A DNA stretch of 64,000 bases from Ostrea edulis (taxonomy: Eukaryota): assembly GCF_947568905.1 (NCBI RefSeq), contig NC_079172.1:61690001-61754000 (forward strand), written 5' to 3'. The translations under genes were made by a program, and so were the position numbers. Below are positions 25,733 to 30,221 of this stretch, one piece after another; within the stretch, counting starts at the first letter, position 1, and each line of letters starts with the position of its first letter. A model generated the notes under the pieces. The model was given only the letters and a program-made list of their open reading frames with translations. It was not told the DNA's origin and made no database searches.

Positions 25733-28700
25733 AACAACATGAAGAGATATTGAATAAATGGGAAAAGGAATATGAAGTGCTATGCAAAACGAGAGCTTAT
25801 TACAGAGTGAAATCAGCAATCGAGTCCAAATCCAAAAATAACGTGACAATAATAAGCGGCACAGGAATGGGGAAAACATTCATTGCTAAGCAGATATGTC
25901 TTCATTTACAAAATGAAGGTTGGGAAATCATCCCCGTTCAACACGTAGACGAGATGACTAGCTATCGCCTTGTCAGTATCAAGTAGGTGTTTCTTCTAGA
26001 CGATCCTGTGGGAGTATTTGGATTCGATCGATCAGCATCAAATGCTATAAAAAGAATATTTGACGCTTTCTCTCCTTCAGATACAACCAAATTTATTTTT
26101 ACCTGCAGAAAAGCTGTTTACAATGAATGCAAAGATATGGAACACAGTTTCCTTAGAAATATTATCGATATTGGAAGTTTAGATCTTATGCTGAGTGAAA
26201 AAGAAATGAAGGACATGCTAGCTTCTCATTGCAAACGTGCAGGAGTGAAGGAGAAAAGGTATGCAAACGTTTCGCTAAATCCTGGTATGAAAATGTTCCC
26301 ACTTTTGTGCCGTTTATTTGCAAACGATGGAGAAAATCAGAAATATGGAAGAACTTTTTTTAAAAAGGCAAATAAAAGCATCATTGACCAATTCAAGAAA
26401 ATGAGAAATCAAAAGGAGTCACAATATGCAGCACTTGTTTTGTGTATGTTAAGAGAAAATGATTTAACAAACACAGCTATTGCTGAATTTATTTGTCTAA
26501 TCAGTGCCAATTTTGATGTTGATGCAGTTTGTATTCAGAAGTCTCTTGAGCAATTGACAGGAACATTTGTTGTGAAGAATAACGATGCTTATTCTTTATC
26601 ACATGACCGTTTGTTTGAAACCATTGCTTACCTACATGCTTTGGAATTCCCTGAACAGGTGGTGGATTCACTGCCAAGTAGTTACATTGCAAACAATGTT
26701 CATGTTACGAGTGAGACTACAGAATCGGGATATGAAAATTTATGTATCTGCTTGAAAAGGAAACACTATGAATTCCTTGCAAGAAGACTTTTAAAGGATA
26801 TCAAAGATGTACATTTTCATGATGTTTTTGATGGGGAAAAGTCTAAAATGTGAAGAGTTCATGAATTTCTTTATTTCATATCTCGACACAGTGTCTACAG
26901 ATGACCTTGTAGATCTGATTTTAACTGTTCATCCTTCTGATTCGAAATTACTTCAGTACAGTGGAAAGGCAATGGAAAGAATTGAATTGCTCATAGGAGA
27001 AAAAATAATCAGAAGTACAATCATAGGAAAAGGAAATGACAAGTACATACAGAACAATGATGGTTCTCCCTATAGCATACTTGCATTGAGTTGGATGATT
27101 CATTATGGGCATATTAGACTTCTGTCTTATATTCTTGATAGACTTGATGATAGGCAACAGCTGTCTGACATAAGGGAATCTGAAGGTGTTAGGTAGTTCA
27201 GCGACTTGTCAGTTGGTTAGGTATGCTATATCTCAATGGATCGCGAAATAAAAAACATGATCCCTACAATGAGCACTTGTGTTTCACTCCCTTAACAGGT
27301 GCTGCTTTTGCTGGACATGAATCAGTGATAGAATTCCTTGTTGAAGAGGGAGCCGACGTAAACCTGCAGGATCACACAGCTGAAGAGGACACCCCTCTCA
27401 CCACAGCCTGCAGACTGGGGTATACCACAGTGGTACAAACACTCTTACGCTTCAAGGCAGACATCAACCAGGTCAGTGGTACAATGAGATCGCCATTGTT
27501 TTGGGCATCACGGATGTCTAGAACTGATATAGTGAGGCTATTGATACAGAACAACTGTGATGTTAATATAGCTGACTCTGTGGGCAGAAATCATATTGCA
27601 TGAAGCAAAAGAAAGAGGTTCTGGTGATATTGTGAAATTGTTGGTTGAGAAGAAGGACGATACAACTTTGGTAGACAAGGATGGAATATTGGCCGTTACA
27701 CTTGCAAATAAATCAAATACAAACGTCATAATACCACGGATCATCTCACAGTGTAAAAATACAACCTCATTTTGCAAAACGCTTATTCAAGAACTAATAC
27801 AAATGATAAGTGATAAATTCTACAGAACCGAAACTACACCAACCAGTATAACAGACAAACCCTTTTCGTGTCTTTTGGATGTACTCACCATGTCGGAATT
27901 AAATAATTCTTTACCCCAGGACTGGCATTCTCTCTGTTTGCGCCATTATATTTCAACAGGACATCAATCTACATTGAAGTGTTTATTAAGTCATGGATAC
28001 CACATCAGTCGCATCAATCCTTCCTTTCAAAAAATATTGTTTACTGCATCACAGGAAGGACATACTGAGATAGTCAAACATTTAGTAGAACACGGTGCTG
28101 ATGTCAATATTTGTAATAACAAGAATGTTATACCGCTCTGTATAGCATCACAGGAAGGACATACTGAGATAGTCAAACATTTAGTAGAACACGGTGCTGA
28201 TGTCAATATTTGTAATAACAAGAATGTTACACCGCTCTGTATAGCATCACAGGAAGGACACACTGAGATAGTCAAACATTTAGTAGAACACGGTGCTGAT
28301 GTCAATATTTGTAATAACAAGAATGTTACACCGCTCTGTATATCATCACAGGAAGGACACACTGAGATAGTCAAACATTTAGTAGGACACGGTGCTGATG
28401 TCAATATTTGTAATGACGAGAATGTTACACCGCTCTTAATAGCATCAGAGAATGGACACGTTGAGATAGTCAAACATTTAGTAGAACACGGTGCTGATGT
28501 CAATATTTGTAATAACAAGAATGTTATACCGCTCTGTATAGCATCACAGGAAGGACACACTGAGATAGTCAAACATTTAGTAGGACACGGTGCTGATGTC
28601 AATATTTGTAATGACGAGAATGTTACACCGCTCTGTATAGCATCACAGAATGGACACACTGAGATAGTCAAACATTTAGTAGAACACGGTGCTGATGTCA

Positions 28701-30221
28701 ATATTTGTGATGACGGGAATGTTACACCGCTCAATTTTGCATCAGAGAATGGACACACTGAGATAGTCAAACATTTAGTAGAACACGGTGCTGATGTCAA
28801 AATATGTAATGTCAGAAGTGCTACACCGTTTGTTATGGCATCACAGAAAGGACACACTGAGATAGTCAAACATTTAGTAGAACACGGTGCTGATGTCAAT
28901 ATTTGTAATGCGAGATATATTACACCACTCTTTTTGGCATCGCAAAATGGACACACTGAGATAGTCAAACATTTAGTACAATACGGTGCTGACGTCAATG
29001 TTTGTGATTACGAGAATGTTACACCGCTCTGTATAGCATCACAGAATGGACACACTGAGATAGTCAAACATTTAGTACAATACGGTGCTGACGTCAATGT
29101 TTGTGGTTACGAGAATGTTACACCGCTCTGTATAGCATCACAGAATGGACACACTGAGATAGTCAAACATTTAGTACAATACGGTGCTGACGTCAATGTT
29201 TGTGATTACGAGAATGTTACACCGCTCTGTATAGCATCACAGAATGGACACACTGAGATAGTCAAACATTTAGTACAATACGGTGCTGACGTCAATGTTT
29301 GTGATTACGAGAATGTTACACCGCTCTGTATAGCATCACAGAATGGACACACTGAGATAGTCAAACATTTAGTAGAACACAGTGCTGACGTCAATGTTTG
29401 TGGTTACGAGAATGTTACACCGCTCTGTATAGCATCACAGAATGGACACACTGAGATAGTCAAACATTTAGTAGAACACGGTGCTGATCAATATTTCGGA
29501 TGTAACAAATATTATACCGCTCTCTATGGCATCACAGGAAGGACATATTGAGATAGTCAAACATTTAGTAGAACACGGTGCTGATGTCAATATTTGTAAT
29601 GACGAGAATGCTACACCGCTCAATATGGCATCACAAAATGGACACACTGAGATAGTCAAACATTTAGTAGAACACGGTGCTGATGTCAATATTTGTAATG
29701 ACGAGAATGTTACACCGCTCTTTATAGCATCAGAGAATGGACACGTTGAGATAGTCAAACATTTAGTAGAACATGGTGCTGATGTCAATATTTGTAATGA
29801 CGAGAATGCTACACCGCTCAATATGGCATCACAAAATGGACACACTGAGATAGTCAAACATTTAGTAGAACACGGTGCTGATGTCAATATTTGTAATGAC
29901 GAGAATGTTACACCGCTCAATATAGCATCACAGAATGGACACACTGAGATAGTCAAACATTTAGTAGAACACGGTGCTGATGTCAATATTTGTAATGATG
30001 GGAATGCTACACCGCTCAATATGGCATCACAAAATGGACACACTGTAATACTCAAACATTTAGTAGAACATGGTGCTGATGTCAATATTTGTAATGACGA
30101 GAATGTTACACCGCTCAATATGGCATCATATAAAGGACACACTGAGATAGTCAAACATTTAGTAGAACATGGTGCTAGTGATGACATTGTTACACCGCAC
30201 TGTAATCCATCCTGTAGTTAG
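25733..30221 (+). pseudogene. NLR-like gene exon 6: STAND NTPase (nSTAND3-like), helical domains and ankyrin repeats; disrupted
   Basis: Walker A VTIISGTGMGKT and Walker B VFLLDDPVG directly after a TAG. FIFTCR sensor-like motif, FPLLCRLF, LSHDRLFETIA. About 4 diverged plus 22 homogeneous ankyrin repeats, spread over ORFs 25750, 25987, 26807, 27223, 27596 and 29481. Confidence 0.88.
28037..30176 (+). repeat. 22 tandem 99-bp (33-aa) ankyrin repeat units
   Basis: Near-invariant core GHTEIVKHLVEHGADVN. A 2-nt (gt) deletion lies at 29488/29489 in unit 15. Confidence 0.95.

What the first reader, a model, noticed from the sequence alone, without database searches (positions are those of the whole stretch)
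28037..30176. Natural DARPin-like array: invariant scaffold, variation confined to binding-surface positions
Seen: in 22 units the scaffold GHTEIVKHLVEHGADVN is almost invariant even in DNA. Variation clusters in the hairpin (NNKNV, NDENV, DDGNV, NVRSA, NARYI, DYENV, GYENV, DVTNI), the two residues after TPL (CI, LI, NF, VM, FL, SM, NM) and the two before GH (QE, EN, QN, QK, YK). Blocks of like units (2-3, 10-14, 16-21) and a recurring ASENGHVE unit (5 and 18) indicate unequal crossing-over. Established: these are the positions randomised in designed ankyrin repeat proteins, and fungal NLRs diversify similar high-identity repeat arrays by shuffling. Inference: a recombination-driven receptor repertoire in an invertebrate.
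Basis: partly seen in the sequence, partly recalled or inferred. Interest (0 to 1): 0.75.

Follow-up and report, generated by a model that had tools for sequence, protein, structure and literature searches.

The report
Ankyrin repeat array in dead oyster gene
This is a real, recently amplified array of 22 near-identical ankyrin repeats whose differences sit on the predicted binding face, but it belongs to a broken (pseudogene) copy of a flat-oyster immune-type gene that has two annotated protein-coding neighbours with the same kind of array, a pattern already well known from fungal NLR receptors.

Summary
The array is real: 22 units of 99 bp at 28037-30176, with 88.6% mean pairwise DNA identity. 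Variation among units is concentrated in the hairpin and the inner helix.

It is not one open reading frame.

The array ends the last exon of a SAM / HEPN(DZIP3-like) / nSTAND3 NTPase / ankyrin gene. In this window that gene also has an in-frame TAG between Walker A and Walker B, two 1-nt insertions and a 37-nt deletion. Contigs identical to the window, from independent DNA runs, span the 37-nt deletion in two runs and one insertion in three. So this copy is a pseudogene.

Two annotated Ostrea edulis paralogues (LOC125659290, LOC130046501) and Saccostrea homologues carry the same scaffold, with 37, about 23 and 14 units. Over 71 distinct units from the three O. edulis arrays, only positions 1, 2, 3, 5, 9, 10, 13 and 14 are hypervariable. 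My counting estimate of dN/dS is about 1.7 there against 0.4 for the scaffold, which is suggestive only.

Five of the six DARPin library positions are among them. Identical 2- and 3-unit blocks show recent in-array duplication.

This is an animal example of the high-internal-conservation repeats described in fungal NLRs. Polymorphism among individuals and somatic change were not tested. The scan has already noted related HEPN-STAND-ankyrin genes elsewhere in this genome.

The parts
13108..13320 (+). SAM-domain exon of the gene
   Evidence: Pfam SAM_1, E = 3.4e-8. tblastn to P0272 and P0121.
21438..21671 (+). HEPN_DZIP3 exon, with the Rx4H motif (RNSLCH) present
   Evidence: Pfam PF18738, E = 1e-18. 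91% amino-acid identity to P0272. The motif is read from the ORF translation.
25456..25621 (+). Short exon, followed by a 111-nt intron at 25622-25732 (GT...AG)
   Evidence: Sequence read. Colinear with P0121 and P0272.
25733..30221 (+). Last exon: nSTAND3 NTPase, helical region, diverged ankyrin repeats, linker and the high-identity array. Broken in five places.
   Evidence: Three-frame reading. 86.6% nt identity to L002 and 85.5% to L003 over 25415-30176.
25858..25878 (+). Walker A motif (GTGMGKT) of the nSTAND3 NTPase
   Evidence: Pfam nSTAND3, E = 2.5e-9. Sequence.
25984..25986 (+). Lesion 1: in-frame TAG between Walker A and Walker B, where the paralogues have CAG (Gln)
   Evidence: Every contig laid here from three runs reads C at 25984. 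Those contigs may come from paralogues.
25990..26004 (+). Walker B motif (FLLDD)
   Evidence: Pfam nSTAND3 C-terminal part, E = 2.6e-7. Translation.
26833..26836 (+). Lesion 2: a run of four G where paralogue L002 has three (+1, frame 1 to 2)
   Evidence: The window's form was seen only in run X1. It could be polymorphic or a homopolymer error.
27194..27195 (+). Lesion 3: junction of a 37-nt deletion (frame 2 to 1). It removes about 12 residues that P0121 and P0272 have.
   Evidence: Alignment to L002 and tblastn gaps. Contigs identical to the window span it in runs X1 and X2. Other copies in X5 and X2 carry the extra letters.
27223..27600 (+). Three to four diverged ankyrin repeats that precede the array
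   Evidence: Pfam Ank and Ank_2, E about 1e-22.
27595..27595 (+). Lesion 4: 1-nt insertion (frame 1 to 2)
   Evidence: In runs X1, X2 and X5 a 450-nt contig identical to the window carries it. A second contig, 91% identical and at similar depth in X1 and X5 (about half in X2), lacks it.
27601..28036 (+). Non-repeat linker between the diverged repeats and the array
   Evidence: Translation. Colinear with residues about 1139-1285 of P0272.
28037..30176 (+). High-identity ankyrin array: 22 units of 99 bp (unit 15 has 97 bp; unit 22 is degenerate at its end)
   Evidence: Pfam Ank_2, E = 6e-171.
29488..29489 (+). Lesion 5: 2-nt deletion in unit 15 (frame 2 to 0)
   Evidence: spacing of 97 instead of 99. 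Not checked in reads.
30219..30221 (+). Stop codon that ends the frame of units 16-22
   Evidence: ORF 29481-30221.

Best explanation
The array is the C-terminal ankyrin (ANK) sensor domain of an inactivated third copy of a flat-oyster SAM / DZIP3-like HEPN RNase / nSTAND3 NTPase / ankyrin gene, which is an NLR-like architecture.

Shown:
- The 99-bp units were multiplied recently by in-register tandem duplication, in steps of one, two and three units. This is why the scaffold is nearly identical even at synonymous sites.
- Differences among units concentrate at eight positions. Positions 1, 2, 3 and 5 lie in the hairpin/loop, and positions 9, 10, 13 and 14 lie on helix 1.
- This copy carries a nonsense codon and four frameshifts. 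No annotated protein matching it was found, while two O. edulis paralogues are annotated as protein-coding.

Inferred:
- Those eight positions form the concave ligand-binding face. In working paralogues they are under weak to moderate diversifying selection, while the scaffold is under purifying selection.
- Ligand binding by the array would release the NTPase switch and so the HEPN effector.
- The duplication mechanism is unequal crossing-over or replication slippage.

The pattern in this window is therefore inherited from a functional ancestor and is now decaying.
For: Domain order comes from Pfam. The gene is colinear with XP_061189952.1 of Saccostrea echinata and with O. edulis LOC125659290 and LOC130046501.

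The five lesions are located against the paralogues. Contigs identical to the window span the 37-nt deletion in runs X1 and X2 and the insertion at 27595 in runs X1, X2 and X5.

No annotated protein matches this locus, either among proteins of 358-1139 aa or among full-length relatives. No RNA run holds the stretch.

Identical 198-396-bp blocks occur inside arrays, but only 93-95% identity is reached between arrays. Identical 3-unit and 2-unit higher-order repeats are present. All 33 units of the window and S. echinata arrays have their nearest neighbour in their own species.

Over 71 distinct units, entropy is 1.57-2.54 bits at positions 1, 2, 3, 5, 9, 10, 13 and 14 and at most 0.68 elsewhere. 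The class defined on the window also holds 16 of 26 nonsynonymous changes in the S. echinata array (p = 0.0003). The same positions vary most in the Mytilus nSTAND3-ankyrin proteins whose repeat register was detected correctly.

Counts on a tree give omega 1.66 against 0.42. The model has pLDDT 97.8, with helix 1 at positions 7-14 and helix 2 at 17-25. It superposes on DARPins at 1.1-1.3 A.
Against: - The TAG at 25984 and the extra G at 26833 were not seen in window-type contigs of runs X2 and X5. These two lesions may be private, polymorphic or assembly errors.
- The 2-nt deletion inside the array was not checked in reads.
- The 91%-identical form at 27560-28009 could be a very divergent haplotype of this locus rather than a further paralogue.
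- The evidence for selection is weak. The class was chosen after seeing the data, recombination was ignored, and p = 0.03. For the a priori DARPin positions omega is 0.81-1.22.
- The 'intact' paralogues also end prematurely inside their arrays: a stop in unit 25 of 37, and a frameshift in unit 21 of about 23. Truncation within an array alone does not prove that a gene is dead.
- No function of any family member has been tested.
Confidence: 0.8

Rival explanations
1. The gene is intact and functional. The stop codon and the frameshifts are assembly errors or rare private mutations of the sequenced animal.
For: The extra G at 26833 lies in a homopolymer, and the window's form was seen only in run X1. 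No laid contig shows the T at 25984.
Against: Contigs identical to the window, from different studies, span the 37-nt deletion (X1, X2) and the insertion at 27595 (X1, X2, X5). Five lesions fall in one 4.5-kb exon. No annotated protein exists for the locus.
Confidence: 0.06
2. The clustering of variation reflects structural constraint only. Scaffold residues are held by the fold and surface residues drift freely. No diversifying selection and no 'repertoire' function is needed.
For: Within the window overall dN/dS is 1.04. It is 0.81 at the a priori DARPin positions, and synonymous diversity is also higher in the variable codons. Any ankyrin protein varies most at non-consensus surface positions. 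The excess over three arrays is only p = 0.03 with a post hoc class.
Against: The N:S ratio is 54:12 in the nine-position class (1-5, 9, 10, 13, 14) against 38:21 outside it (Fisher p = 0.04). Omega at the eight hypervariable positions is above 1, and 2.1-3.5 when scaled to the global synonymous rate. The same positions recur in independent arrays. In the fungal counterpart such positions test positive (PMC4986451).
Confidence: 0.35
3. The dead array serves as a reservoir of unit variants that are copied by gene conversion into the active paralogues.
For: Three arrays with one scaffold occur in the same genome. The two annotated ones lie about 375 kb apart on one chromosome. Single units are up to 97-99% identical between loci.
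Against: No tract of 198 bp or more exceeds 95% identity between loci, whereas tracts within arrays reach 100%. Most units have their nearest relative in their own array (53 of 71).
Confidence: 0.07
4. The array is diversified somatically, for example in haemocytes, as the first reader suggested testing.
For: None in these data.
Against: The gene is broken. Contigs identical to the window recur in unrelated DNA runs beside the array. Nothing in the sequence points to a dedicated mechanism.
Confidence: 0.01

Closest known systems
High-internal-conservation (HIC) ANK/TPR/WD repeats of fungal NLRs (Paoletti 2007; Dyrka et al. 2014, PMC4986451)
   Same: A STAND NTPase is followed by 33-residue ankyrin repeats that are at least 85% identical over 100 aa or more. 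Repeat number is labile. Hypervariable sites lie on the inner helix and the hairpin of the concave face. Diversification is thought to work by shuffling of repeats.
   Different: This is an animal (bivalve) gene. The NTPase is nSTAND3, not NACHT or NB-ARC. The N-terminal modules are SAM plus a DZIP3-like HEPN domain. This particular copy is a pseudogene. Within-species polymorphism and positive selection are not demonstrated here.
Designed ankyrin repeat proteins (DARPins; Binz et al. 2003, from my own knowledge) and the ANK-N5C library (PMC4308713)
   Same: The scaffold is consensus-like (43% identity, 1.1-1.3 A rmsd). Variation falls at positions 2, 3, 5, 13 and 14. Position 10 is randomised in ANK-N5C.
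   Different: Position 33 is an invariant Cys here. Positions 1 and 9 also vary, though they are D and the H of TPLH in DARPins. The variation is natural, limited in alphabet, and shared between duplicated units.
Ostrea edulis LOC125659290 and LOC130046501, and Saccostrea echinata LOC133197762 (RefSeq 'uncharacterized proteins')
   Same: The exon order and domain order are the same. The repeat scaffold is the same. Amino-acid identity is 56-91% with the O. edulis paralogues and 46-73% with the S. echinata protein, depending on the segment.
   Different: Those are annotated as protein-coding, with 37, about 23 and 14 units. The window's copy has 22 units and five disabling lesions.
Bivalve expansions of DZIP3-like HEPN / NACHT / STAND genes (Takeuchi et al. 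2022, PMC9646362; Kaur et al. 2021, PMC8195603)
   Same: It is a lineage-specific expanded, clustered family of immune-type genes with gain and loss of copies.
   Different: In the passages my searches for 'ankyrin' returned, these papers do not describe high-identity ankyrin arrays or their hypervariable positions.

Membership tests
Ankyrin repeat (Pfam PF00023 / PF12796) | 33-residue helix-turn-helix-hairpin units that match the family profile | tested here: met
   Ank_2 E = 5.9e-171 and Ank E = 7e-132. AF2 model pLDDT 97.8, with two helices per unit. Foldseek TM-score 0.96 to 6mol_A.
DARPin-like pattern | Variation restricted to library positions 2, 3, 5, 13, 14 and 33 on an otherwise fixed consensus | tested here: not met
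   Five of the six positions are hypervariable. Position 33 is an invariant Cys, and positions 1, 9 and 10 vary as much or more. The resemblance is real but partial. The list of library positions comes from my own knowledge of Binz et al. 2003.
NLR-like STAND receptors with high-internal-conservation repeats (fungal type) | A STAND NTPase directly upstream of the repeats in one gene | tested here: met
   nSTAND3 at 25750-26250, upstream of the ankyrin repeats in the same exon. The family is nSTAND3, not NACHT or NB-ARC.
NLR-like STAND receptors with high-internal-conservation repeats (fungal type) | At least 85% identity between repeats over at least 100 residues | tested here: met
   211 of 560 windows of 100 aa reach 85% or more identity at lag 33. 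The best reaches 98%.
NLR-like STAND receptors with high-internal-conservation repeats (fungal type) | Repeat-number polymorphism among individuals of one species | not tested
   The array was not sent to read laying, which turns away long repeats. Only differences between paralogues and between species are known: 22, 37, about 23 and 14 units.
NLR-like STAND receptors with high-internal-conservation repeats (fungal type) | Positive selection at sites on the binding face | tested here: inconclusive
   Omega 1.66 against 0.42, p = 0.03, with a post hoc class and recombination ignored. Within the window, 1.30 against 0.57.
Oyster SAM-HEPN_DZIP3-nSTAND3-ANK genes (LOC125659290 type) | The same domain order and colinear exons | tested here: met
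Oyster SAM-HEPN_DZIP3-nSTAND3-ANK genes (LOC125659290 type) | An open reading frame through the NTPase and the repeats | tested here: not met
   One nonsense codon and four frameshifts. Two of them are confirmed in independent runs.

The most novel reading that the evidence does not exclude
The O. edulis cluster of SAM-HEPN-nSTAND3-ankyrin genes is an animal counterpart of the fungal HIC-NLR system. Frequent unit duplication, loss and exchange, possibly drawing on dead arrays like this one, would generate population-level diversity of intracellular receptors. Eight selected contact positions per repeat would set the specificity.
Probability: 0.15. Interest if true: 0.75.

Novelty: new member of a known kind. 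Interest (0 to 1): 0.4.

Why it matters
High-identity repeat arrays with hypervariable contact sites are the hallmark of rapidly diversifying fungal NLRs. Dyrka et al. [quoted passage not shown]

These data show the same design in an expanded bivalve NLR-like family armed with a HEPN RNase domain. The eight variable positions replicate across three oyster arrays, and in part across a Saccostrea array and the Mytilus proteins examined. This gives a concrete and testable candidate for how oysters might vary intracellular recognition.

The particular array flagged here is a dead copy, so on its own it is an ordinary product of birth-and-death evolution in a gene family.

Tried and rejected
- **Single-sequence AlphaFold2 of units 1-15.** It gave pLDDT 43.7 and was discarded. 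A 70-row alignment then gave 97.8.
- **Word search with the 651-aa ORF.** It found only generic or distant ankyrin proteins of 49% identity or less, because of its length window. The exhaustive search with the 288-aa NTPase piece was needed to reach full-length relatives.
- **A 17-nt 'intron' around the TAG at 25984.** Rejected as too short, and homologues align straight through it.
- **The stops at 25684-25719.** These are explained by a genuine 111-nt intron.
- **Long antisense ORFs over the array (28027-28998 and 29468-30187, minus strand).** These are by-products of the repeat.
- **Raw-read run X21.** It laid no reads.
- **Scaffold damage per unit.** It does not separate this array cleanly from the paralogues: 1.77 and 0.67 against 0.52-0.84 inside the coding sequences and 1.55 after the L002 stop. 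Duplicated units are not independent.
- **Recent inter-locus conversion.** No tracts of 198 bp or more above 95% identity between loci.
- **Joined gene model.** Exons and ORF pieces were searched separately.
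Full report
**1. The observation**

Tandem Repeats Finder reports one array at 28046-30176, with period 99, 21.5 copies and 91% matches. Cutting from 28037 in the frame of ORF 27596-29551 gives 22 units of 33 codons. Units 1-21 are on average 88.6% identical in DNA. Sets (2,3), (4,6), (11,12,13) and (17,19) differ by 0-1 nt, and units 5 and 18 differ by 6 nt. Amino-acid identity averages 79%, and 211 of 560 windows of 100 residues reach at least 85% identity at lag 33.

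Unit 15 has 97 nt: two bases are missing between 29488 and 29489. The frame therefore shifts, and units 16-22 lie in ORF 29481-30221.

**2. Where the variation lies**

I number the repeat so that T-P-L is positions 6-8. This register was checked against ankyrin-1 and ankyrin-2 alignments. The window's units then have most states at positions 9, 10, 2 and 3, followed by 1, 4, 5, 14, 17 and 25.

Minimum-change counts give 40 nonsynonymous and 10 synonymous changes.
- The six DARPin library positions (2, 3, 5, 13, 14, 33; from my own knowledge of Binz et al. 2003) hold 14 of the 40 (p = 0.009).

Pairwise Nei-Gojobori estimates of dN/dS are 1.30 for the variable class, 0.57 for the scaffold and 0.81 for the DARPin six. 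The clustering is real. The nonsynonymous excess within this one array is weak.

**3. What the array belongs to**

Pfam finds four domains in order on the + strand: SAM (about 13.1 kb), HEPN_DZIP3 (21438-21671, with the Rx4H motif present), nSTAND3 (25750-26250) and ankyrin (ANK) repeats (27223-30221). A 111-nt intron lies at 25622-25732.

The exhaustive protein search with the 288-aa NTPase piece found a full-length relative, XP_061189952.1 of Saccostrea echinata (1871 aa, 61% identity). Searching from that protein gave two Ostrea edulis proteins, LOC125659290 (2103 aa) and LOC130046501 (1970 aa), and one from S. cucullata. The two O. edulis genes lie about 375 kb apart on OX387712.1. The window's last exon is 86.6% and 85.5% identical to theirs in DNA. 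The window therefore holds a third paralogue.

The species is taken to be O. edulis for two reasons.
- The same DNA runs hold both contigs identical to the window and a contig whose differences from the window (4 letters and one 1-nt gap over 26746-26940) equal those of L002, the locus of LOC125659290.
- Earlier notes of this scan call the genome the flat oyster.

**4. This copy is broken**

Against the paralogues, the last exon carries five lesions.

| Lesion | Place | Change |
|---|---|---|
| 1 | 25984-25986 | TAG where the others have CAG, between Walker A and Walker B |
| 2 | 26833-26836 | Four G instead of three (+1) |
| 3 | 27194/27195 | 37-nt deletion |
| 4 | 27595 | +1 |
| 5 | 29488/29489 | -2 |

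Each lesion accounts exactly for one observed change of frame: 1 to 2, 2 to 1, 1 to 2 and 2 to 0.

I laid contigs of three DNA runs from three studies on 25400-28045.
- Contigs identical to the window span the 37-nt deletion in X1 and X2.
- Contigs identical to the window span the insertion at 27595 in X1, X2 and X5.
- Other copies in the same runs lack each lesion.
- The T at 25984 was seen in no laid contig, and the extra G was seen only in X1. Those two lesions may be young, private or assembly errors.

No RNA run holds the stretch, which is weak evidence. No annotated protein corresponds to the locus. I conclude that this is a pseudogene, with confidence of about 0.85.

The array itself was not sent to read laying, because that tool states that it turns away long repeats. 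The 2-nt deletion is therefore unverified.

**5. The family shows the same design, replicated**

Scanning with the window's consensus unit gives 37 in-phase units in the LOC125659290 locus and about 23 in LOC130046501. In the first, the annotated coding sequence ends at an in-frame stop in unit 25, and a second stop lies in unit 30. In the second, a -4 shift in unit 21 ends the coding sequence. S. echinata has 14 units.

Among 79 O. edulis units, 71 are distinct. The identical ones form a 3-unit block present two to three times (units 12-19 of the LOC125659290 array) and a repeated 2-unit block in the LOC130046501 array. Within arrays, 198-396-bp tracts reach 99.5-100% identity. Between loci the best tracts reach 93-95%. 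Recent events are therefore duplications inside arrays, not exchange between loci.

Every unit of the window and S. echinata arrays has its nearest neighbour in its own species. The distance is 0.217 between species against 0.114 and 0.129 within. The arrays have therefore expanded or been homogenised independently. Pairwise site incompatibility is common (134 of 378 pairs) and rises with distance (a PHI-like permutation test, p < 0.0002). This is consistent with recombination or conversion among units.

**6. Hypervariable positions and selection**

Over the 71 units, Shannon entropy is 1.57-2.54 bits at positions 1, 2, 3, 5, 9, 10, 13 and 14, and at most 0.68 at the other 25 positions. Position 33 is an invariant Cys.

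The class defined on the window also captures 16 of 26 nonsynonymous changes in the S. echinata array (p = 0.0003). The same positions top the lists in the Mytilus nSTAND3-ankyrin proteins whose repeat register was detected correctly.

A parsimony count on a FastTree tree gives 150.5 nonsynonymous to 16.5 synonymous changes at the eight positions. That is omega 1.66, with a binomial p of 0.033 for nonsynonymous excess. The scaffold gives omega 0.42. This result is suggestive only. The class is post hoc, the tree ignores recombination, and the a priori DARPin set gives 1.22.

**7. Structure**

With a 70-row alignment, AlphaFold2 gives pLDDT 97.8 and pTM 0.92. Helix 1 covers positions 7-14 and helix 2 covers 17-25. 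Positions 26-33 and 1-6 form the loop and hairpin.

Foldseek places the model on extended DARPins at 1.1-1.3 A rmsd and 42-43% identity (6mol_A, 6moi_A, 6moj_A). It also matches AnkB and ankyrin-1 repeats.

So positions 9, 10, 13 and 14 lie on the inner helix and positions 1, 2, 3 and 5 lie in the hairpin. Solved complexes and two design libraries treat this region as the binding surface. The ANK-N5C library randomises 2, 3, 5, 10 and 13, with 33 also selected (PMC4308713).

**8. Comparison with what is known**

Dyrka et al. 2014 (PMC4986451) describe this combination in fungal NLRs. The ANK, TPR and WD repeats there are more than 85% identical internally, vary in number, evolve in concert, and have positively selected sites on the inner helices and hairpin. 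They found such repeats in only about 0.8% of metazoan repeat proteins.

Bivalve expansions of DZIP3-like HEPN and STAND genes are documented (PMC9646362; PMC8195603). Searches of the held library found no paper describing high-identity ankyrin arrays in these bivalve genes, and 'ankyrin' does not occur in the main text of PMC9646362.

I therefore rate this as a new member of a known kind. The specific locus is an ordinary pseudogene. The family-level pattern deserves a population study.

**9. Verdict**

Interest is 0.4. The most novel reading still open is an animal analogue of the fungal HIC-NLR diversification system, perhaps using dead arrays as donors. I put it at about 15% overall. The donor part has no support so far.

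Noticed in passing
L002:29457-33102: The array of O. edulis LOC125659290 has 37 in-phase units. An in-frame stop in unit 25 ends the annotated protein, and another stop lies in unit 30. About 12 further units lie downstream as untranslated remnants.
   Followed up: partly
L003:20331-20789: In LOC130046501 a net -4 shift in unit 21 ends the annotated protein. Two to three more units follow out of frame. All three O. edulis arrays are therefore truncated distally.
   Followed up: partly
window 27560-28009: DNA runs X1, X2 and X5 each hold a second form, 91% identical to the window (similar depth in X1 and X5, about half in X2), that lacks the insertion at 27595. It matches neither L002 (82%) nor L003 (84%). 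It is either a fourth paralogue or a very divergent haplotype.
   Followed up: partly
window 15496-16249: A 351-bp unit is repeated 2.1 times at 99% identity in an intron. The paralogue's intron (L003:14345-15108) holds a stretch 88-93% similar.
   Followed up: no
window 36812-37430, 22088-22401, 4345-4636 and 8065-8312: A dispersed repeat is shared with introns and flanks of L001, L002 and L003 at 70-88% identity. It is probably a transposable element.
   Followed up: no
window 46970-47844: A G+C-richer minisatellite (period 44/87, about 19 copies, 88% matches) sits in the only bin of the window with GC 0.435.
   Followed up: no
window 6466-7067 and 51008-51888: Two further minisatellites: 46 bp x 13 at 97%, and 41 bp x 22 at 91%.
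   Followed up: no
P0005, P0034, P0076 and other Mytilus proteins: Mytilus CARD- or HEPN-nSTAND3-ankyrin proteins have arrays with up to 86% identity at lag 33. In those whose repeat register was detected correctly, the most variable positions are largely the same (1-5, 9, 10, 13, 14). Many unnamed proteins from ENA assemblies, with a T-A-L-M motif in place of T-P-L, show similar arrays.
   Followed up: partly
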